From positions 181,437 through 245,436 of the IMG/VR virus record IMGVR_UViG_3300043410_001471: 64,000 nt of DNA; one strand, written 5' to 3'. Positions 2,851 through 63,880 of this stretch are shown here, one piece after another; positions within the stretch are counted from its first letter, which is position 1, and each line of letters begins with the position of its first letter. The notes under the pieces are model-generated. The model ran no database searches and was not told the DNA's origin. It worked only from the letters and a program-made list of their open reading frames with translations. A program made the position numbers and the translations under genes.

Positions 2851-4077
2851 ATGAAATTTTGGGATACAGGTGAACAAACCAACACAGAAGTATTTGACTA
2901 CGATGAGATGAAAAAGAAGTTCATTGAGAACTTGGATTATCTTAAAGAAATGTCAGTAGAAGAGCAAACTCTATACAAAAAATGGATGGAGTGGAATGAA
3001 GATTTAATTGGTAATATGCGAAAATTACCTGCTTTACAACAACATTATGATTCGTTGTGGAAACCGACTGATATTATGGATAAGGAATTAACGATAAAAG
3101 AAATCGAAGGATTGCAACCATATATTGAAGTTGTAGAAGATAATCCAAAAGAATCTACTCGTTGGACTGAAATCCGTAGATTAATTCATACTATGGAGTT
3201 TCAGGCAAATCCAGGTCGTAATGTAAAGTGCTATGTTAAAGATAGAACAAGCGGAAAGATATTAGGACAAGTTTGTTTAGGTTCAGACATTACATCATTG
3301 GGTGTGAGAGATGCATACATTGGTTGGCAGAAAGAAGATAAGTTTCAAAATGGTAAATTGAATTGTACTACTATTGCAACTACAATCGTATCAACCCAAC
3401 CATTTGGATATAATTTCTTAGGTGGTAAGTTAATTGCAGCATTGGCAACTGCACCTGAAGTTAGAGATTACTGGCAAAAGAAATACAACAATCCATTGAT
3501 TGGAGTAGGTACAACATCATTGTATGGTATTCACTCACAATACAATGGTATTCCTCATTTCAAAACATTGGGAGAATCTAAAGGTAAGATTTCTACAAAG
3601 CCAGATGATAAGGTATACGACCCATGGCATCAATGGTTGAAAGAAAATCGTTCTGAATGGTATAAGCAACACATTATGGATGAGAGAGAACGAAATGGTG
3701 CTAATATGGGATACGATAGAAACGGACCTGTAAGTGGAATCAAACAAAAGATTATTCAGGCAATTTTTAAAGAGTTGGGAATCAAAGGAAACGCTTATGA
3801 CCACGGATTCCAAAGAGGTGTGTATTTCGCACAAATGTATGAGAATGGTAATGAGTTCCTTTGTTCTAAAATCGAAGAGAAGGATTTAGTTCTTAAAAAG
3901 AAATTCGCTGATGGTAATGATTATACTATCAAATGGTGGAAAGATAAAGCAATTAAGAGATATACTAAATTGCATGAAGAAGGTAAAATTAAACCCGAAG
4001 TTTTATTCTATATTGATGCAATTGGAATGACTTGGGAACAAATGAAAGAACATTACTTAAAAGAAGTGGGAAGATAA
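2851..4077 (+). CDS. DUF4338 / DruA-like protein
   Basis: Motifs PGRN, QPFGYNFLGGKLIAAL, TTSLYG..SQYN, GESKG typical of DUF4338. Confidence 0.7.
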   Translation: MKFWDTGEQTNTEVFDYDEMKKKFIENLDYLKEMSVEEQTLYKKWMEWNEDLIGNMRKLPALQQHYDSLWKPTDIMDKELTIKEIEGLQPYIEVVEDNPKESTRWTEIRRLIHTMEFQANPGRNVKCYVKDRTSGKILGQVCLGSDITSLGVRDAYIGWQKEDKFQNGKLNCTTIATTIVSTQPFGYNFLGGKLIAALATAPEVRDYWQKKYNNPLIGVGTTSLYGIHSQYNGIPHFKTLGESKGKISTKPDDKVYDPWHQWLKENRSEWYKQHIMDERERNGANMGYDRNGPVSGIKQKIIQAIFKELGIKGNAYDHGFQRGVYFAQMYENGNEFLCSKIEEKDLVLKKKFADGNDYTIKWWKDKAIKRYTKLHEEGKIKPEVLFYIDAIGMTWEQMKEHYLKEVGR

Positions 4078-4080
4078 AAT

Positions 4081-6642
4081 ATGTATCAAAATATATACTA
4101 CGAAAGAAGCAAGAATTTAATTCATCTATGGGATGATACCAATGGATACCAAACATTTCCATACCGAAAATATGCCTACAAAAAAGACCCATATGGACAG
4201 CATCGTTCAATGTATGGGGATAAGTTATCTCGTATTTCAAAGTGGGAAAAGGATGAGGCCGAAGATTTATTCGAATCGGATGTACCAGAAACAACGAGAG
4301 TATTGGTAGATATCTATGATAATGATTTACCATCAAAAGGACATACAGTATTAACATTTGACATTGAGGTAGAAATGATATCAGGTCTACCAAACACACG
4401 AGAAGCTCAAAACGAAATCACAGCAATCGCAGCACACGATTCTATTACAAAAGAATATGAAGTGTTCGTATTAGATAAAGAAAGAAAAGTTAAAAACAAT
4501 GCTACTAATTTTAGTAAAAACGGCAGAGAGGTTAAAGTACACATATTTGACAACGAAAGGAATTTATTATTTGCATTTCTTAATTATTACCAACAAGTTG
4601 ACCCGACTATTCTAACGGGTTGGAACATTGATTTTTTCGATATTCCATATCTTTACAATCGTATTAAGAATGTTTGTGGAGAGGGACATGCTAAGAGATT
4701 ATCTCGTATCGGAGAAGCATTCTGGTCACCATATAGAGAGAAGTTTAGTTTTGGTGGTGTGAGTGTATTGGATTACATCAATTTGTATAAAACATACACA
4801 TATACATTGGAAGCATCTTATACATTGAACTACATCGCTACCAAAGAATTGGGTAGAGGTAAGGTGGAGTATGAGGGAAGTTTGGATGATTTATTTGTAA
4901 ACGATTTGGAGAAATTCATTGAGTATAACATTGTCGATGTGGAGTTGGTTGTAGCAATGGATGCCAAATTACAATTCATTGAATTATGTAGAGCCGTTTG
5001 TCACGCTGGATTTGTTCCATATGAAGATTACATATTTTCATCAAAGTGGTTAGAAGGAGCTTGTTTAGGATATCTTAAAAAGAAAGGATTGGTAGCAACC
5101 AATAAACCAAAAGATAGAAAGGAAAGAATGCAAGCTCTTAGAGATAATAACGAAGAGAAATTCATTGGAGCATATGTAAAAGAACCTATCGTTGGTAAGT
5201 ATGATTGGATTTATGATTTGGACTTAACATCTCTATATCCATCAATCATTATGACTTTGAATATCAGTCCCGAAACAAAGATTGGTAAGATTCAGAATTG
5301 GGATGCTGAAGCAAATATCAGAGGGTTAGATACTACATACAAAGTAGTTGGTAAAGATGGTGATACTTATGAATATACGACTCAGGAACTAAAGGAAGTT
5401 ATTAAGGATAGTAATTTAGGTGTTGCGGCAAATGGAGTTCTCTATTCACAAGATTCACCGGGTTTGATTGCCGATATCTTAAATGATTGGTTTCAAAAGC
5501 GTGTTGAGTTCCGTAAATTAGAAAAGAAATATGGTACGGAAGGTGATACTGAAAAGTATGAATTCTATGCTAAAAGACAGCTAGTACAAAAGATTCTTTT
5601 GAACTCAATGTATGGTGTATTGGGTTTACCAGCATTTCGATTCTATGATGTGGATAACGCTGAAGCAGTAACCCTAACAGGTCAAACTGTTATTAAGAAA
5701 ACAGCAGAGATGGCAAACATCAAATATTGGAAAGAACTCGGAACTAAAGAGGATTATAATGTGTACATCGATACTGATTCCATTTATATGATGGCAGAAC
5801 CTTTGGTAAAACATAGATACCCTGAATATAAAACATTTGACCAAAATCGAATGGCTGAAGAGGTAAATACTATTGCCGAAGAAACTCAAACATTTTTGAA
5901 CACATTCTATGATATGTTGGCTGAAAAGTTCTTCTTTATTCCAAAAGAGAAACATAGATTTGAGATTAAGAAAGAATACATTAGTAAAGCAGGATTTTGG
6001 GTAGCAAAGAAGAGATATGCACAATGGATGATTCTAAAAAATGGTGTACCTTGTGATAAGTTGGATGTTAAAGGATTGGATGTGGTTCGTTCATCATTTC
6101 CTAAAGCATTTCAGGACTTTATGGCTAAAATGTTGAAAGATATTTTAATGGGTAAGGATAACGCATTTATGGATGAATCTTTATTGGATTTCAAAAAGAA
6201 TATGATTAATCTACCTGTAAACAAAATAGCAAAGGGTGGAGCAATTAAGGAGTTAAGTAAGTATGATAATGGTAGTTGGAGAAAAGATGGTGGAGAAGCT
6301 ATCGCATCATTTGAAAAGGGAACACCTGCACACGTTAAAGCTGGAATCACTTACAATCGATTATTAAAATTCTTCAATTGTCCATTTAAGCATGAACCAA
6401 TTAGAGATGGTGATAAAGTAAAGTGGGTATATCTTAAAACAAATCCATTGGGATTAGATACTGTTGCATTTAAGGATTATAATGACCCAAAAGAGATTAT
6501 GGATTTCGTAGAACAATATGTTGATAGAGATATGATTTATAAAGCAGAGTTGGAAAACAAAGTAGATGATTTCTATAACGCCTTAAAATGGAGTAAAGCA
6601 TCAACCGAAGCACAAACCGCTAAAAAGTTTTTTAGTTTTTAA
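4081..6642 (+). CDS. Family B DNA polymerase with 3'-5' exonuclease
   Basis: ExoI FDIEV, ExoII GWNIDFFD, polB motifs DLTSLYPS, KILLNSMYG, YIDTDS. Confidence 0.97.
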   Translation: MYQNIYYERSKNLIHLWDDTNGYQTFPYRKYAYKKDPYGQHRSMYGDKLSRISKWEKDEAEDLFESDVPETTRVLVDIYDNDLPSKGHTVLTFDIEVEMISGLPNTREAQNEITAIAAHDSITKEYEVFVLDKERKVKNNATNFSKNGREVKVHIFDNERNLLFAFLNYYQQVDPTILTGWNIDFFDIPYLYNRIKNVCGEGHAKRLSRIGEAFWSPYREKFSFGGVSVLDYINLYKTYTYTLEASYTLNYIATKELGRGKVEYEGSLDDLFVNDLEKFIEYNIVDVELVVAMDAKLQFIELCRAVCHAGFVPYEDYIFSSKWLEGACLGYLKKKGLVATNKPKDRKERMQALRDNNEEKFIGAYVKEPIVGKYDWIYDLDLTSLYPSIIMTLNISPETKIGKIQNWDAEANIRGLDTTYKVVGKDGDTYEYTTQELKEVIKDSNLGVAANGVLYSQDSPGLIADILNDWFQKRVEFRKLEKKYGTEGDTEKYEFYAKRQLVQKILLNSMYGVLGLPAFRFYDVDNAEAVTLTGQTVIKKTAEMANIKYWKELGTKEDYNVYIDTDSIYMMAEPLVKHRYPEYKTFDQNRMAEEVNTIAEETQTFLNTFYDMLAEKFFFIPKEKHRFEIKKEYISKAGFWVAKKRYAQWMILKNGVPCDKLDVKGLDVVRSSFPKAFQDFMAKMLKDILMGKDNAFMDESLLDFKKNMINLPVNKIAKGGAIKELSKYDNGSWRKDGGEAIASFEKGTPAHVKAGITYNRLLKFFNCPFKHEPIRDGDKVKWVYLKTNPLGLDTVAFKDYNDPKEIMDFVEQYVDRDMIYKAELENKVDDFYNALKWSKASTEAQTAKKFFSF

Positions 6643-54465: not shown

Positions 54466-54839
54466 GGGGATGCCCGGTATTGACAGGTATGAAGTGTTAG
54501 TACAATTGATGCAAGCAGGATTAGATGGAAATCCTTAAACACCTATCGAACAATAAACGCAGTAGAATTATCTACAATGACCTTCGAAGATGCTATGGCA
54601 TTCGTTGGTGCTGATTTAGCAGTAGCTGCCTAATCTCTCCCGCACACATCGTGGGACTTGAAATAGAATGTGAACCCAGGTGGATACCAATTGAACCCGA
54701 AATCGAATTGGAAACATTAATGATAACGAATGTATAAATCTTTATCTATTTTGTCAGTTAAGAAAAACTGACTAAGCTTGTGAATGAGGTTTATTAAACC
54801 ATATTTTGGACGAGGGTTCGACTCCCTCCATCTCCACCA
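54466..54839 (+). ncRNA. ssrA: tmRNA; predicted tag (A)AVELSTMTFEDAMAFVGADLAVAA*
   Basis: GGGGATG/CATCTCC-ACCA acceptor with G3.U70, TTGAC after the 5' end, GGGTTCGACTCCC T-arm, tag ORF 54559-54633 ending AVAA. Confidence 0.93.
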
Positions 54840-55125: not shown

Positions 55126-55509
55126 ATGAAACTAAAAGACTTATTAAACGAAAGTGTAGTTGCCAAAGATGGTAAAGTAACATCAAGTGGTAATCTTATC
55201 GGTTATTATGAATTCGATAGAGATTCAGATTCTTTTTGGGTAGATGATGTAAAGAAAGGCAAAGGTCAATTATCATTTGAAACCAAAAAGGAAGTTGAAG
55301 ATTACTTTAAGAAGAATGAAAAAGATGCTATCAAACATTTAGGAAAATTGAGAGAATCCATTCCAGAAGCAACAATGCATGATATGACAAGAGAAAAGGC
55401 ATTGGATAATCTTAAAGATGTAATTCATAATATCAGACCTTATAGTAAGGAAGTAGTTAAACATTGTGAAGCAGCTATTGCAATCATAGAGAAATTTGAA
55501 AAACGATAA
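55126..55509 (+). CDS. Small protein with MKLKDLLNE N-terminus
   Basis: ATG 55126 preferred; second LRES site internally. Confidence 0.75.
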   Translation: MKLKDLLNESVVAKDGKVTSSGNLIGYYEFDRDSDSFWVDDVKKGKGQLSFETKKEVEDYFKKNEKDAIKHLGKLRESIPEATMHDMTREKALDNLKDVIHNIRPYSKEVVKHCEAAIAIIEKFEKR

Positions 55510-56261
55510 TGATTAAGTTAAAAGATTTATTAAATTCAAACATATTAAATGAGGGTGTAGATGACCCGGGTATTCTTAAATGTGTATTTTTAGCAGGAGG
55601 ACCTGGTAGTGGTAAATCGAAGGTAGCTGCAGATTTGTTTGGTGTACAAGGTATAGCAACATTTTCGGCAAGTGGATTGAAGATGGTGAATTCTGATATC
55701 GCATTTGAAGCTCAATTAAAAAAGAGTGGTATTGACCCAAAAGATTTAGGTAAAATTGAAAAGGAAGACCCTGCATTATGGGATTTCATTACTAAATCAA
55801 AAGAAGGTCCGAGAGAAACGGGAAAAGGAATTACTCAAAAAACCAAAGCATTTTATGAAGAGGGTAGATTGGGTATGATTATAGATGGTACGGGTGATGA
55901 TGTGGCTAAAATCAGAAAGCAAAAAGCAAGAGCAGAAGAGTTAGGATACGATACATATATGGTATTTGTGAATACATCATTGGAAATAGCTCAGGCTCGT
56001 AACGCTAAAAGAAGTAGAAGTTTGCCAGAATCATTGGTTAATGATATATGGAAAGAATGTCAGCACAATTTAGGAGCATTTCAAACCCTATTTAGTGGTA
56101 ATTTCCGTATCATAGATAACACAAAGGATGGTAACAATATAACATCAAGCATTCAAAAAGCAGTTGATGGATTCATAAGAGAACCATTGAGAAATGCAGT
56201 TGGTAAGAAATGGGTAACGAATGCAAGAATTTTAAAAAACGCAAATATAATTAAGAAATGA
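55509..56261 (+). CDS. Zeta-toxin/AAA_33-like P-loop kinase with MIKLKDLL N-terminus
   Basis: LAGGPGSGKS, MIIDGT, ARNAKRSR. Confidence 0.75.
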   Translation: MIKLKDLLNSNILNEGVDDPGILKCVFLAGGPGSGKSKVAADLFGVQGIATFSASGLKMVNSDIAFEAQLKKSGIDPKDLGKIEKEDPALWDFITKSKEGPRETGKGITQKTKAFYEEGRLGMIIDGTGDDVAKIRKQKARAEELGYDTYMVFVNTSLEIAQARNAKRSRSLPESLVNDIWKECQHNLGAFQTLFSGNFRIIDNTKDGNNITSSIQKAVDGFIREPLRNAVGKKWVTNARILKNANIIKK

Positions 56262-56959
56262 TAAAGGCAGGTAGATACGATTTAAACGAAGCATCATTAG
56301 GTAGAATATATCAACATGTGGTTTCAAATCCTAAAATGAAAAATTGGGGAGTAGTAACTGCAAGTAGAGGTGAATTGACACCTGCTGAAAACAAACAAAG
56401 AAACAAAGAGTTAGAAAACGATTTGCGTAAATTGGGATACGGGTTTGTTCATGTAGATGGTATGTGGCAGGAATGTAGACAACCAAATACGGAATATAAG
56501 GATTGTCCAGAAGATATGAAAGTACCAACTGAAGAGAAATCTTTATTTGTACCTAACATATCACAACAACATATTCAGGCATTAGGTAAGAAGTATCAAC
56601 AAGATAGTGTATTATTTGCGGATGAAGCAACTAAAGCCAAAGGTGAAGCAACATTTATTGATTCAAAATCAGGTGAAGCATTCAACATTGGTAAGTTTGC
56701 ACCTGGCAAAATAGCACAAGGTTATTCTAAAATGAAAGGTGGTAAAGTATTCACATTTGAACCACAAGAAGAGCCTAAAGAAGAACCAAAGGATGATATG
56801 AAGTTGAAATCTTTATTACCTAAAGGAATATTGGATAAAACTGTTATGAATCCTGATACAGGTAAAATGATTAAGGTTAAATCGGCGTTGAAATACGATG
56901 ATGACCATAAGGTTAAGCAGGCTGCAAAATCAATGATTAAAACTGCTTTACATAAATAA
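56258..56959 (+). CDS. Conserved-looking phage protein with C-terminal basic module
   Basis: LNEASLGR; TASR..EN..RN..L..DLR..GYG; LGKKYQQDSVL. Confidence 0.7.
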   Translation: MIKAGRYDLNEASLGRIYQHVVSNPKMKNWGVVTASRGELTPAENKQRNKELENDLRKLGYGFVHVDGMWQECRQPNTEYKDCPEDMKVPTEEKSLFVPNISQQHIQALGKKYQQDSVLFADEATKAKGEATFIDSKSGEAFNIGKFAPGKIAQGYSKMKGGKVFTFEPQEEPKEEPKDDMKLKSLLPKGILDKTVMNPDTGKMIKVKSALKYDDDHKVKQAAKSMIKTALHK

Positions 56960-58967: not shown

Positions 58968-59837
58968 AAAGATTATACATAGTAGATTCGTTCTACATAG
59001 TATAACAACGGCCGCCTATGGTCGTGAAATAAACTACGAAAGTAGGATAAAGTGGGTACATTGGTTAATGTAACTGCGGCTACTCCCCCGTAAGGGAGCA
59101 AGCTTGAGTAGGCAAGTGAGATATCATTCTGACTTTGTAGGTGGGGGTAACACTATCATCGAAGAGCCGGAATGACTGGGCAAATGTAGATTGTTCAGTT
59201 GAGATGGGAACATCAATAAGAATAACTCATAGAATTATTGTGAAAAGTAAGGACTTAATCTCTCCTTATTATTGCGTGATTCAATACAAAAGTGGTCTTG
59301 AGAATCAAGCTATCCGAAAGGACGTGAGATAAGATAATGTACGAGTGGTGTCGTTATTATCCTTTAGACTGGGACACCAATCCCTTCTATTGAAGATGAC
59401 TTGAAGTATGGTGATAGGGATATCACATTGAGTAGTATAGTATTCTGTTGTTCAAAAGATAACGGAGCTGGTGGCAAACCACTACTCGAATCCATCTACA
59501 AACCAAAACTCATTTGCATTTTGACGCAAAATCATAAATCAAGTAAGCAAAAGTGTTTGCCAGTTTCAGATGAAAGGTGTGTACATAGTAGGGAGTTGTT
59601 CCTTGCCACGATACCTCCGCAAGAGGTCTGTGATTCTTTTGAAAGGTTTCTAGCATCGCAAGTGTGAATCAGCTCGGCAGGGTTGAAGAAAATAAGTAGG
59701 AAGAGAGTAATCTGAAACTCTAAGAGTGGTTGGCTATACTAACCCACATTGAATTGGTACATCTCAAAAGGGTGTGGAAAAGAAAGGAAACAATAATCTT
59801 TCGAAAGCTGGTTCACAAAAAGGAGTATTCTCATCCT
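58968..59837 (+). ncRNA. Large structured ncRNA, GOLLD-like (boundaries approximate)
   Basis: ~870 nt, GC-richer than flanks, no convincing ORF, many short hairpins (CTAC-GAAA-GTAG 59034, CTCCC..GGGAG 59083, ACCTC-CGCAA-GAGGT 59613), directly upstream of the tRNA array. Confidence 0.7.
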
Positions 59838-59844
59838 TATATAA

Positions 59845-59915
59845 GCGAGATTAGTGTAACGGTAGCACAGCAGCCGTCCAGGTTGCAAGATGGGGTTCAA
59901 TTCCTTGGTTTCGCT
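59845..59915 (+). tRNA. Atypical tRNA-Gly(TCC), G33, weak T-stem
   Basis: GCGAGAT/GTTTCGC-T acceptor; anticodon loop CG-TCC-AG. Confidence 0.65.
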
Positions 59916-60131
59916 CTTCGTAGTGGTTTACGGCAGATAGGTTGGGTGTATCTCTCCAATAACTGGAAATCCACTTTAAAAAAAATGACAAATAGTGTGA
60001 AGATATGGTTTTCGTAGGGGATTTTCGCCTTAAACAATCTCAACCAATACGAATTAGTGTTGATGGTAAAAGCGGCTGTAGCTAGGCCTTTGAAAGTACC
60101 ACCCTACAAATCTTTCTTTTATAGCTTATAA

Positions 60132-60202
60132 GCGGTGGAAGTGTAATGTTTGCACACCTAGCGTCCAGCTAGGGGGAGGTGGTTCGAATCCACACCACCG
60201 CT
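60132..60202 (+). tRNA. Atypical tRNA-Gly(TCC), G33
   Basis: Perfect GCGGTGG/CCACCGC-T acceptor; CCTAG/CTAGG stem; loop CG-TCC-AG. Confidence 0.75.
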
Positions 60203-60326
60203 CAATTAACTAATTTATTGAGGATGATAATAACCGGTGCATGACACGACGTGGCGTATTTTGAAGATGAATTAGTTTATTTTATAAAAAAATAACTTTT
60301 AATAAATTTTTACATATATATTAACA

Positions 60327-60485
60327 ATGAAAACTCTTAACATACATACAAATTGTTCATTAGCGGCTCAAAGAAATGAGTGGCAAGGGCTTGGTATGTT
60401 TAGTACGATAGCAAATCCGGCAGTCTTGAATTTAGGCAAGGTGGATTATATTGGAAAAAAGTTAAGGGACACTGATGTAGGATAG
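60327..60485 (+). CDS. 52-aa possible leader peptide
   Basis: MKTLNIHTNCSLAAQRNEWQGLGMFSTIANPAVLNLGKVDYIGKKLRDTDVG, followed by a terminator. Confidence 0.45.
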   Translation: MKTLNIHTNCSLAAQRNEWQGLGMFSTIANPAVLNLGKVDYIGKKLRDTDVG

Positions 60486-60517
60486 TAGTGTAAGATTTAG
60501 ATAAAAGATATTTAAAG

Positions 60518-60556
60518 AACCCCTTAACTAATTAAAAAAAGTTAAGGGGTTTTTTG
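60518..60556 (+). terminator. Rho-independent terminator immediately before tRNA-Asn
   Basis: AACCCCTTAAC/GTTAAGGGGTT 11-bp stem + T-run. Confidence 0.85.
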
Positions 60557-60560
60557 TTTT

Positions 60561-61831: not shown

Positions 61832-61839
61832 CGATAAAG

Positions 61840-61886
61840 GATACTGGTTGTATCGCCTGACGAGGAGAGTGTGGTTCGATTCCACA
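61840..61886 (+). pseudogene. tRNA-like fragment without acceptor stem
   Basis: GATAC-TGGTT-GTATC hairpin and perfect T-arm TGTGG-TTCGATT-CCACA. Confidence 0.45.
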
Positions 61887-61890
61887 AAAC

Positions 61891-61960
61891 TGCATGGCTT
61901 AGTGGAAAAGAGTTATCTCTCATAAGGATGACCAAATGAGTTCGAACCTCATACATGCAA
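61891..61960 (+). tRNA. Atypical tRNA(CAT)
   Basis: TGCATG/CATGCA acceptor, extended 7-bp anticodon stem, shortened 8-9 connector. Confidence 0.5.
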
Positions 61961-63808: not shown

Positions 63809-63880
63809 GCAGATATCGTATAATGGTTATTACTCTAGCCTTCCAAGCCTGAGATGTCAGTTCGATTCTGACTATCTGCT
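63809..63880 (+). tRNA. tRNA-Gly(TCC), canonical loop
   Basis: GCAGATA/TATCTGC-T; CT-TCC-AA loop; two mismatches in the anticodon stem. Confidence 0.8.

What the first reader, a model, noticed from the sequence alone, without database searches (positions are those of the whole stretch)
59845..60202. Two divergent tRNA-Gly(TCC) genes share a non-canonical CG-TCC-AG loop (G33)
Seen: sequences differ throughout, yet both keep Gly identity elements (G1-C72, C2-G71, U73), the same G33/G38 loop and weakened T-stems; a separate Gly(TCC) with a normal loop exists at 63809. Known: U33 is near-invariant (U-turn), and staphylococci use non-proteinogenic tRNA-Gly with altered T-arms for peptidoglycan synthesis. 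Inference: selected non-ribosomal glycyl donors, anticodon-nuclease decoys or GOLLD-associated RNAs (they directly follow it).
Basis: partly seen in the sequence, partly recalled or inferred. Interest (0 to 1): 0.66.

Follow-up and report, generated by a model that had tools for sequence, protein, structure and literature searches.

The report
Dedicated glycine tRNAs for Mom enzymes
Two odd glycine tRNA genes in a 245-kb freshwater phage belong to a widespread family of phage tRNA look-alikes that keep what is needed to be loaded with glycine but not to read codons, and that occur with Mom-type enzymes, which use glycyl-tRNA to chemically disguise phage DNA.

Summary
Window 59845-59915 and 60132-60202 are two divergent tRNA-Gly(UCC)-like genes with the loop C32-G33-U34-C35-C36-A37-G38. 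They sit just 3' of a GOLLD RNA, and a canonical tRNA-Gly(UCC) lies at 63809.

They are not drifting pseudogenes. They belong to a large phage family whose cloverleaf is held by compensatory changes. G1-C72, C2-G71, G3-C70, U73 and C35/C36, the bacterial GlyRS identity set, are nearly invariant. Positions 32 and 38 covary as a Watson-Crick pair (C-G 44, U-A 11), giving a 6-bp anticodon stem with a 5-6-nt loop.

G33 itself is not universal. That position is G, A, C, U or two bases.

In 30 of 30 stand-alone members the RNA abuts a Mom-like DNA-modification gene. The same holds in cultured Salinibacter, Arthrobacter and Microbacterium phages. The window's phage encodes two Mom-like genes and exactly two such RNAs.

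Mu Mom is known to transfer glycine from Gly-tRNAGly to adenine in DNA. Best reading: these are phage-encoded, non-decoding glycyl donors for Mom-like enzymes, analogous to staphylococcal non-proteinogenic tRNAGly. Charging and use by Mom are inferred, not shown.

The parts
59845..59915 (+). tRNAGly-like RNA, copy 1. Acceptor GCGAGAU/GUUUCGC, U73, no encoded CCA. Anticodon hairpin is a 6-bp stem plus loop GUCCA (conventional loop CGUCCAG). T stem has U.G, G.U, G.U, G-C, G-C.
   Evidence: 34.1 bits; R1 91.4 bits; MFE cloverleaf; one of only two strong R1 hits in the genome
60132..60202 (+). tRNAGly-like RNA, copy 2. Acceptor GCGGUGG/CCACCGC, U73, no encoded CCA. D loop lacks GG. Same loop CGUCCAG. 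T stem has a G49.A65 mismatch.
   Evidence: 37.2 bits; R1 84.8 bits
59428..59837 (+). GOLLD RNA, conserved 3' domain. The abundant RNA seen in metatranscriptome contigs spans about 59004-59807. Copy 1 starts 7 nt after it.
   Evidence: RF02032, 301.7 bits, E 4e-86; contig depth in the thousands over 59004-59807, falling to 0-255 over 59808-59941
59916..60131 (+). Conserved spacer RNA of about 215 nt between the two tRNA-likes. Present in some relatives; in others the two tRNA-likes are 5 nt apart.
   Evidence: homologous stretch in L034 and L062; RNA contig depth 90-905; no Rfam hit
63809..63880 (+). Ordinary tRNA-Gly(UCC) of the phage's tRNA array, with loop CUUCCAA and T stem G-C, U-A, C-G, A-U, G-C. 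It fills the decoding role.
   Evidence: (57.6 bits)

Best explanation
The two elements are phage-encoded, non-proteinogenic tRNAGly-like RNAs.

Proposed pathway:
1. They are transcribed with GOLLD and the tRNA array.
2. They are cut out by the normal tRNA-processing enzymes and receive CCA.
3. The host GlyRS charges them with glycine, because its full identity set is preserved (G1-C72, C2-G71, G3-C70, U73, C35, C36).
4. They are kept out of translation by two features: a closed anticodon hairpin (a 32-38 Watson-Crick pair and no U33 turn) and weak or mismatched 49-65, 50-64 and 51-63 T-stem pairs that should lower EF-Tu affinity.
5. The glycyl ester is then used by the phage's two Mom-like GNAT enzymes. 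These lie at G000:179773-180537 and about 180527-181324, ending 113 nt before the window starts.
6. The enzymes glycylate N6 of adenine in phage DNA, which rearranges to N6-carbamoylmethyl-dA and protects the DNA from restriction.

A private donor pool would spare host and phage translation, and would escape sequestration by EF-Tu.

Shown here: the sequence and structure features, their covariation, the family's spread, and its genetic linkage to Mom-like genes.

Inferred: processing, glycylation, exclusion from EF-Tu and the ribosome, and use by Mom-like enzymes.
For: (1) Structure under selection. On 58 family members, 98.3% of cells pair (71.9% in shuffles) and the covariation score is 0.748 against 0.216, with 0 of 500 shuffles reaching it. 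The sixth anticodon-stem pair (32-38) is C-G 44, U-A 11, A-U 1.

(2) Glycine identity kept while the rest changes. Pair 1-72 is GC in 57/57, pair 2-71 is CG in 56/57, pair 3-70 is GC in 55/57. U73 is present in all but one row of the alignment printed (L014 has C), and UCC (once CCC) in all but L085 and one ordinary tRNA-Gly(GCC), L026:83-154, that passed the score cut. Pairs 4-7 and the anticodon stem vary freely. These are the GlyRS determinants listed in PMC7826273.

(3) Decoding geometry not kept. Loops are 5 or 6 nt inside the closing pair, with G, A, C, U or two bases at '33'. Some T loops are GGCAGAA or AGCAAAA. The stand-alone clade lacks nt 51 and has A63 bulged.

(4) Linkage to Mom-like genes. 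All 30 stand-alone members found by one pattern scan abut a Mom-like ORF (phrog_1384, E 1e-45 to 1e-50). None of 88 other tRNAs from the same scan has one within 500 nt. High-GC phages L014, L054 and L042 carry the same ParB-Mom-tRNA-like-terminase module.

(5) Cultured phages. Salinibacter phage B2_17 has a tRNA-Gly with loop CGUCCAG 33 nt after its Mom-like gene. Arthrobacter phage Shade has an unannotated tRNA-like overlapping the Mom-like 3' end (R1 60.9 bits). Microbacterium phage Warren has a tRNA-Gly 33 nt after its Mom-like acetyltransferase.

(6) Gene counts in near-complete jumbo genomes. Mom-like genes to tRNAGly-like RNAs are 2:2 in G000, G006, G007, G008 and G009, and 1:1 in G014. 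The count is 0:0 in G013, whose GOLLD-flanking tRNA-like has lost glycine identity (GUG acceptor, loop CUUAACG).

(7) The Mom-likes look active. G000 Mom-like 1 hits PDB 8bv8 Mom (E 3e-10). Mu R111 and S124 align to invariant R96 and S109. Paralogue 2 has the same ELTRL...GSNIES.

(8) Known chemistry. Mom transfers glycine from Gly-tRNAGly to dA in dsDNA (PMC13219725).

(9) EF-Tu. Using the ddG table in PMC3239215, copy 1's G50.U64 (+1.4) and G51.U63 (+0.8) sum to about +2.2 kcal/mol. The canonical Gly at 63809 sums to about +0.1. This is my own arithmetic.
Against: - No experiment shows charging, EF-Tu avoidance or use by Mom.
- In the window's own genome the Mom-like genes are about 60 kb from the tRNA-likes. 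None of the 80 closest relatives of its Mom-like gene has a tRNA-like within 3 kb. For this clade the link is therefore co-occurrence, which shared descent could explain in part.
- Two related but incomplete records with tRNA-likes show no Mom-like gene: G010 (80% complete) and G011 (52%).
- Mu Mom works with all three ordinary E. coli tRNAGly isoacceptors, so a private donor is not required.
- Enterococcus phage phiEf11, Polaribacter phage P12002L and others have Mom-like genes without an adjacent tRNA-like.
- Group C, the T4-like marine fragments with a lone CGUCCAG tRNA-like, shows no Mom-like gene in the 7-23% of each genome that is held.
- The Fisher test ignores relatedness. Its Mom queries also came from the same loci, although PHROGs confirms the family independently.
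Confidence: 0.6

Rival explanations
1. They are processing punctuation only. The tRNA-shaped modules would be kept solely so that RNase P and the 3'-end processing enzymes cut out GOLLD and the neighbouring spacer RNA, as the tRNA-like at the MALAT1 3' end does. They would have no aminoacyl role.
For: In every GOLLD-linked relative a tRNA-like starts 7-20 nt after GOLLD. RNA contig depth collapses exactly there and rises again over the spacer. In some phages the same position holds a minimal acceptor/T-arm helix with no anticodon arm and no glycine identity (L062, L068, L083, L087, L090).
Against: It does not explain why G1-C72, C2-G71, G3-C70, U73 and C35/C36 stay fixed while everything else changes. 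It does not explain why most family members stand alone with no GOLLD and no other tRNA. It does not explain why they abut Mom-like genes. Any tRNA of the array could serve as punctuation. This role can coexist with the best explanation.
Confidence: 0.12
2. They are working decoders of GGA/GGG whose anticodon loop was changed to escape a host anticodon nuclease or another tRNA-targeting defence.
For: Phage tRNAs with altered anticodon loops that resist host tRNA nucleases have been described (my own knowledge, not checked here). Many anticodon nucleases cut next to position 33/34. The phage keeps the UCC triplet.
Against: Relatives have 6- and 8-nt conventional loops, a covarying Watson-Crick 32-38 pair, T loops without U54-U55, a bulged T stem and D-arm insertions. 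These are incompatible with ordinary decoding. The phage also has an ordinary tRNA-Gly(UCC). No nuclease specific for tRNAGly(UCC) is known to me.
Confidence: 0.08
3. They are decoys or regulators rather than donors. Examples: sponges for toxins that act on Gly-tRNAGly (such as TacT-type acetyltransferases), titrators of GlyRS, or uncharged inhibitors that time Mom activity.
For: The same conserved identity set would be needed to mimic tRNAGly. Linkage to Mom-like genes would also fit a regulator of Mom.
Against: There is no toxin, antitoxin or defence gene consistently next to them; the neighbours are ParB-like, Mom-like and terminase genes. A donor role follows directly from Mom's established co-substrate. 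A regulator role needs extra assumptions.
Confidence: 0.08
4. They are decaying duplicate tRNA-Gly genes with no function.
For: Low Rfam tRNA scores (34-37 bits). ARAGORN misses copy 2. The loop sequence varies among relatives.
Against: There is strong compensatory covariation in all four helices. The same architecture occurs in phages from 31% to 68% GC. The loop CGUCCAG recurs in unrelated backbones. Synteny with Mom-like genes is conserved.
Confidence: 0.02

Closest known systems
Non-proteinogenic tRNAGly(UCC) of Staphylococcus (glycine donors for FmhB/FemA/FemB)
   Same: Extra tRNAGly(UCC) copies exist beside ordinary ones. They keep the GlyRS identity set, have a 6-bp anticodon stem with a 5-nt loop, carry T-arm changes that weaken EF-Tu binding, and have a G at T-loop position 55 (seen in some phage relatives). 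They act as donors for a GNAT-fold aminoacyl-transferase (PMC7826273; PMC3239215).
   Different: The staphylococcal tRNAs are a lineage restricted to staphylococci and feed peptidoglycan synthesis. Here the genes are phage-borne, the two window copies keep UUC in the T loop, and the linked enzyme is Mom-like and acts on DNA. No Fem homologue was sought.
Phage Mu Mom with host Gly-tRNAGly (N6-carbamoylmethyl-dA)
   Same: The same enzyme family is involved (phrog_1384; PDB 8bv8 hit; catalytic Arg and Ser conserved). The same co-substrate class is involved, glycyl-tRNAGly.
   Different: Mu encodes no tRNA and uses all host isoacceptors. The paper describes this as scavenging a host resource and does not mention phage-encoded donors. 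Here the phage supplies its own non-decoding tRNAGly-like RNA.
tRNAs embedded in or next to GOLLD RNAs
   Same: GOLLD lies in tRNA arrays, and tRNAs are sometimes covalently linked to it (bioRxiv 10.1101/2024.12.08.627333 and PMC12990946). Here a tRNA-like follows GOLLD by 7 nt.
   Different: The published cases are ordinary tRNAs (Met upstream, Phe inside). The 3'-flanking pair here is a specific non-canonical tRNAGly family that also exists far from any GOLLD.
tRNA-like 3'-end processing modules (MALAT1 mascRNA; mitochondrial tRNA punctuation)
   Same: A tRNA-shaped element at the boundary of an abundant long non-coding RNA, with an atypical anticodon arm (my own knowledge). The RNA depth profile is consistent with this.
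   Different: Those elements carry no aminoacylation identity, whereas these conserve the complete glycine set.

Membership tests
Canonical elongator tRNA-Gly(UCC) | Cloverleaf reaching the Rfam tRNA gathering score | tested here: met
   34.1 and 37.2 bits against a threshold of 29; the other tRNAs of the array score 50-74
Canonical elongator tRNA-Gly(UCC) | U33 and an open 7-nt anticodon loop (32-38 not Watson-Crick) | tested here: not met
   G33 in both copies. C32-G38 pairs and covaries with U-A across the family.
Canonical elongator tRNA-Gly(UCC) | T stem tuned for EF-Tu binding, and G18-G19 in the D loop | tested here: not met
   Copy 1 has G50.U64 and G51.U63 (+1.4 and +0.8 kcal/mol in the table of PMC3239215). 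Copy 2 has G49.A65 and no GG in the D loop. Actual binding was not measured.
Staphylococcal-type non-proteinogenic tRNAGly | GlyRS identity set G1-C72, C2-G71, U73, C35, C36 | tested here: met
Staphylococcal-type non-proteinogenic tRNAGly | 6-bp anticodon stem with a 5-nt loop | tested here: met
Staphylococcal-type non-proteinogenic tRNAGly | UGC/UGU instead of UUC in the T loop (G55) | tested here: not met
   Both window copies have UUC. G55-type loops (GGCAGAA, GGCAGCA, AGCAAAA) occur in relatives L065, L092, L078 and L026 copy 1.
Staphylococcal-type non-proteinogenic tRNAGly | Member of the staphylococcal lineage and used by Fem transferases | tested here: not met
   The lineage part was tested and is not met: the genes are borne by a freshwater phage. 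Use by Fem transferases was not tested; no Fem homologue was sought. This is an analogue, not a member.
Co-substrate of a Mom-family enzyme | Mom-family gene with catalytic Arg/Ser in the same genome | tested here: met
   Two ORFs, E 1.9e-53 and 2.5e-49 to phrog_1384. R96/S109 correspond to Mu R111/S124.
Co-substrate of a Mom-family enzyme | Genetic linkage of the RNA with the enzyme gene | tested here: inconclusive
   In this genome they are 60 kb apart with a 2:2 gene count. In other clades they are directly adjacent, 30 of 30, and also in three cultured phages.
Co-substrate of a Mom-family enzyme | RNA is glycylated at a 3' CCA end and donates glycine to dA in dsDNA | not testable with these tools
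   CCA is not encoded in the window copies. This needs biochemistry.
GOLLD-associated tRNA | Immediately adjacent to a GOLLD RNA on the same strand | tested here: met
   The gap is 7 nt. The same arrangement is seen in 8 relatives.
Nuclease-resistant decoding phage tRNA | Altered loop but otherwise decoding-competent architecture conserved in relatives | tested here: not met
   Loop length and T arm vary in relatives.

The most novel reading that the evidence does not exclude
The tRNA-likes may be more than spare glycine carriers. They could be enzyme-specific cofactors. Each Mom-like paralogue would recognise its own tRNA-like through the closed anticodon hairpin and altered D/T arms, as FmhB reads the D/T arms of staphylococcal non-proteinogenic tRNAs. 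That would give orthogonal donor-enzyme pairs insulated from EF-Tu. In the jumbo-phage clade their production would be coupled to the GOLLD nanocage RNA through co-transcription, and GOLLD could store or deliver them. This would give GOLLD its first functional partner.
Probability: 0.2. Interest if true: 0.9.

Novelty: new variant of a known kind. Interest (0 to 1): 0.8.

Why it matters
Mom was only recently shown to use glycyl-tRNA to hypermodify DNA, and that work assumes the phage scavenges host tRNA. If phages from at least four host phyla carry their own non-decoding tRNAGly next to Mom-like genes, several things follow:

- tRNA-dependent DNA modification would have a dedicated RNA cofactor.
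- It would be a second, independent case of 'non-proteinogenic' tRNAGly, after staphylococcal cell-wall synthesis.
- Many phage 'tRNA-Gly' annotations, and some unannotated intergenic regions such as the one in the Arthrobacter Marthavirus phage Shade, would be cofactor genes rather than translation genes.
- There would be a natural set of tRNA variants showing which features exclude a charged tRNA from EF-Tu and the ribosome while keeping synthetase recognition. That is useful for orthogonal-tRNA engineering.
- It would be the first concrete lead on what is co-expressed with GOLLD.

Cultured phage-host pairs make all of this directly testable.

Tried and rejected
- **GenBank phages, DNA search.** BLAST of the window region and of the T4-like group C element found no match. 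A weak hit to Vibrio phage Seahorse is an ordinary tRNA-Gly with no Mom-like gene nearby.
- **GOLLD as the explanation.** Rejected as general. Seventeen stand-alone loci (131 kb) hold no GOLLD and no other tRNA. Many GOLLDs end in a terminator or a minihelix instead.
- **Adjacency in the jumbo clade.** The 80 closest relatives of the window's Mom-like gene have no tRNA-like within 3 kb.
- **ParB-like gene next to the window phage's Mom-like genes.** Not found.
- **Group C (T4-like marine fragments).** The neighbours are gp46/47, Hsp20, gp45, gp44/62 and regA. There is no Mom-like gene in the fragments held, so this group remains unexplained.
- **Cellular genomes.** Only about five of these are real tRNAGly-like genes with the loop, all in MAGs. 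They were not followed up.
- **MAFFT alignment of the family.** It mis-registered the loops. It was replaced by a covariance-model alignment.
- **Metatranscriptome data.** Only contigs were available, so RNA ends, strand and charging could not be read.
- **Not tried.** No search for Fem-type transferases or a phage GlyRS was made.

Full report
**1. What is in the window**

The window is the last 64 kb of a 245,436-bp IMG/VR virus record. The record has direct terminal repeats, is 31.7% GC and comes from fresh water.

Rfam finds a tmRNA (54466-54839), a GOLLD RNA (59428-59837, 301.7 bits) and about 24 tRNAs. Together with two tRNAs at the other genome end, these cover all 20 amino acids.

The two reported elements are real. 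Copy 1 is 59845-59915 and copy 2 is 60132-60202. Both start GCG, end CGC-U73 and have the loop CGUCCAG.

- They score 34.1 and 37.2 bits on the Rfam tRNA model, against 50-74 for the rest. ARAGORN sees only copy 1.
- CGTCCAG occurs nowhere else on that strand of the genome.
- An ordinary tRNA-Gly(UCC) with loop CUUCCAA lies at 63809.
- Both copies fold, as minimum-energy structures, into cloverleaves in which C32 pairs with G38. This leaves a 6-bp stem and a 5-nt loop.

**2.

A pattern scan for the loop plus T loop in IMG/VR found the same heptamer in tRNAGly-like genes on several different backbones.

All close relatives carry GOLLD directly upstream. After it they always carry a pair of tRNAGly-likes, either 5 nt apart or separated by a conserved spacer of about 215 nt.

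Within these pairs the loop is not constant. Variants are:

- CGUCCAG
- a 6-nt C-AUCC-G
- AUUCCU or AUUCCA
- an 8-nt C-AUUCCA-G

More distant GOLLDs are followed by one of three things:

- tRNAGly-likes with CUUCCAG, CUCCCAG or CGAUCCAG, some with a hairpin inserted in the D arm or with T loops such as GGCAGAA
- a bare acceptor/T-arm minihelix
- a terminator

A second scan fixed only the D arm, UCC and the T loop. It revealed a large stand-alone branch of the family.

A covariance model built from 12 members and aligned to 58 gave the following:

| Measure | Result |
|---|---|
| Cells paired | 98.3% (71.9% in shuffles) |
| Covariation score | 0.748 (0.216 in shuffles; 0 of 500 shuffles reach it) |
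| Pair 32-38 | C-G 44, U-A 11, A-U 1 |
| Pairs 1-72, 2-71, 3-70 | essentially invariant |
| U73 | present in all rows but one (L014 has C) |
| Pairs 4-7 and anticodon stem | vary freely |

So the conserved object is a glycine-identity tRNA shape with a closed anticodon hairpin presenting N(N)UCCA. G33 is its commonest version, not a defining one. Pseudogene drift is excluded.

**3. The decisive context**

The stand-alone members sit in loci with no GOLLD and no other tRNA.

I clustered their neighbours and scanned them with PHROGs. The gene order is fixed: ParB-like, then Mom-like DNA modification protein (phrog_1384, E 1e-45 to 1e-50), then the tRNA-like, then terminase small and large subunits. 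The tRNA-like touches or overlaps the 3' end of the Mom-like ORF, in either orientation.

Among loci from one and the same scan, 30 of 30 Gly-like elements abut a Mom-like ORF. None of 88 other tRNAs, mostly tRNA-Trp, has one within 500 nt (Fisher 1e-28, not corrected for relatedness).

Three high-GC loci found through the CGUCCAG scan carry the same module.

The window's own genome has two Mom-like ORFs ending 113 nt before the window starts. It has exactly two strong hits to the family model; the next best hits are tRNA-Trp, tRNA-Met and the ordinary Gly, at about 42 bits.

Counts in near-complete related genomes:

| Genome(s) | Mom-like genes | tRNAGly-like RNAs |
|---|---|---|
| G000, G006, G007, G008, G009 | 2 | 2 |
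| G014 | 1 | 1 |
| G013 | 0 | 0 |

In G013 the GOLLD-flanking tRNA-like has lost glycine identity.

The Mom-likes hit the Mom crystal structure 8bv8 and keep the residues equivalent to Mu R111 and S124.

**4. Literature**

Silva et al. (Nat Commun 2026, PMC13219725; preprint 10.1101/2023.03.24.534169) show that Mu Mom is a GNAT. It transfers glycine from Gly-tRNAGly to N6 of dA in dsDNA. An on-base rearrangement to N6-carbamoylmethyl-dA follows. All three E. coli isoacceptors work, and the authors treat the tRNA as a scavenged host resource.

Text searches of both versions find no mention of phage-encoded or adjacent tRNAs. Other papers mentioning momylation or Mom-like genes do not mention them either.

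For staphylococci, PMC7826273 lists the features of non-proteinogenic tRNAGly:

- the same identity set
- UGC/UGU in the T loop
- a 6-bp anticodon stem with a 5-nt loop
- poor EF-Tu and ribosome binding
- competition between EF-Tu and FmhB for ordinary Gly-tRNA

PMC3239215 gives the T-stem rules for EF-Tu. By those values copy 1's G50.U64 and G51.U63 cost about 2.2 kcal/mol. The ordinary Gly tRNA at 63809 costs about 0.1. Copy 2 has a 49.65 mismatch and U51-A63 (+1.0). The stand-alone clade lacks nt 51 altogether.

**5. Cultured examples**

- Salinibacter phage B2_17 has an annotated tRNA-Gly 33 nt after its Mom-like gene, and its loop is CGUCCAG.
- Arthrobacter phage Shade has an unannotated tRNA-like (R1 60.9 bits; loop AUUCCGU with an A32-U38 pair) overlapping the Mom-like 3' end.
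- Microbacterium phage Warren has a tRNA-Gly(CCC), fairly ordinary in shape, antisense and 33 nt after its Mom-like 'acetyltransferase'.
- phiEf11, P12002L, SerPounce, PMBT2 and DillTech15 have Mom-like genes without one. The RNA is therefore an optional accessory.

**6. Mechanism proposed and its status**

Shown: the anatomy, the selection pattern and the genetic linkage.

Inferred, in order:

1. RNase P and 3' processing, then CCA addition. CCA is not encoded in the window copies.
2. Glycylation by host GlyRS.
3. Exclusion from EF-Tu and the ribosome.
4. Glycyl transfer by the Mom-like enzymes to phage DNA.

The rationale is taken by analogy from staphylococci. A donor that EF-Tu does not bind is fully available to the transferase and does not drain translation.

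The GOLLD link is secondary. In this clade the donors are transcribed with GOLLD. RNA contig depth runs to thousands over 59004-59807, falls to 0-255 over copy 1 and rises to 90-905 over the spacer. One RNA contig bridges the GOLLD 3' end, a diverged tRNA-like and the spacer. This fits co-transcription followed by tRNA-type processing. Contigs cannot prove RNA ends.

**7. Weak points**

- In the window's clade the association is co-occurrence at a distance, not adjacency, and the genomes are related.
- Two incomplete relatives lack a detectable Mom-like gene.
- The T4-like group C, which has the identical loop, its own promoter-like sequence and a bulged acceptor stem, has no Mom-like gene in the small fragments held.
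- A few MAG copies were not examined.

**8. Verdict**

The other two inferences are not supported.

Relative to the literature I could search, a phage-encoded non-decoding tRNAGly paired with Mom-like enzymes is a new variant of known kinds. It is directly testable in cultured systems.

Noticed in passing
window 59916-60131: The 215-nt stretch between the two tRNA-likes is conserved in some relatives (L034:55-263 minus strand; L062 about 3915-4130 minus strand; opening motif UUCGUAGUGGUUU.CGGCAGA). It has RNA contig depth 90-905 in freshwater metatranscriptomes and matches no Rfam family. It is probably an unknown small RNA released by the flanking tRNA-likes.
   Followed up: partly
window 60300-60560: A promoter-like TTACATATATATTA is followed by a conserved AUGAAAACUCUUAAC.UACAUAC segment and a strong terminator (CCCCUUAAC...GUUAAGGGGUUUUUU). 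The element is present after the tRNA-like pair in every GOLLD-linked relative. It is either a 52-aa ORF (60327-60485) or a structured RNA.
   Followed up: no
G000:179773-181324 (ends 113 nt before window position 1): Two tandem Mom-like DNA modification genes (phrog_1384, E 1.9e-53 and 2.5e-49), both with the catalytic Arg/Ser motif. This predicts that the phage's DNA carries N6-carbamoylmethyl-adenine or a related adduct.
   Followed up: yes
NC_042015.1 46210-46280 (L423:1795-1865): Arthrobacter phage Shade has an unannotated tRNAGly-like RNA overlapping the 3' end of its Mom-like gene. 22 Arthrobacter phage records, most with near-identical match statistics, carry the Mom-like gene; only Shade was examined for the RNA.
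   Followed up: partly
L283, L295, L312: Three marine phage loci carry an ordinary-looking tRNA-Trp(CCA) 1-2.3 kb from a distant Mom-like gene (about 30% identity). This may be chance, or a hint that some Mom-like enzymes use another aminoacyl-tRNA.
   Followed up: no
L006, L012, L016, L021, L028, L030, L032, L036, L040, L046 (e.g. L028:8744-8817): T4-like marine phage fragments carry a lone tRNAGly-like with the identical CGUCCAG loop. It has a one-base bulge in the acceptor stem, an encoded CCA and its own sigma70-like promoter, and lies between gp46 and hsp20. No Mom-like gene is seen in the 7-23% of each genome that is held.
   Followed up: partly
L062, L068, L083, L087, L090 (just 3' of GOLLD): In some phages the position after GOLLD is occupied by a minimal tRNA-like: an acceptor stem plus T arm, with no anticodon arm and no glycine identity.
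   Followed up: no
window 55509-56959: Adjacent ORFs with polynucleotide-kinase/ATPase-like and SAM-methyltransferase-like PHROG hits lie just upstream of tRNA-Met and GOLLD. They could be an RNA repair or modification pair.
   Followed up: partly
window 61833-61960: A sub-threshold tRNA-like (Rfam 24.4 bits at 61891-61960) and a T-arm-like stretch before it lie inside the tRNA array.
   Followed up: no
L122, L203, L130, L175: A few bacterial MAG contigs (Alphaproteobacteria; Abditibacteriales in L130; L175's organism was not listed) hold tRNAGly genes with the CGUCCAG loop and otherwise fairly ordinary arms. No Mom-like gene lies within the 8-kb loci.
   Followed up: no
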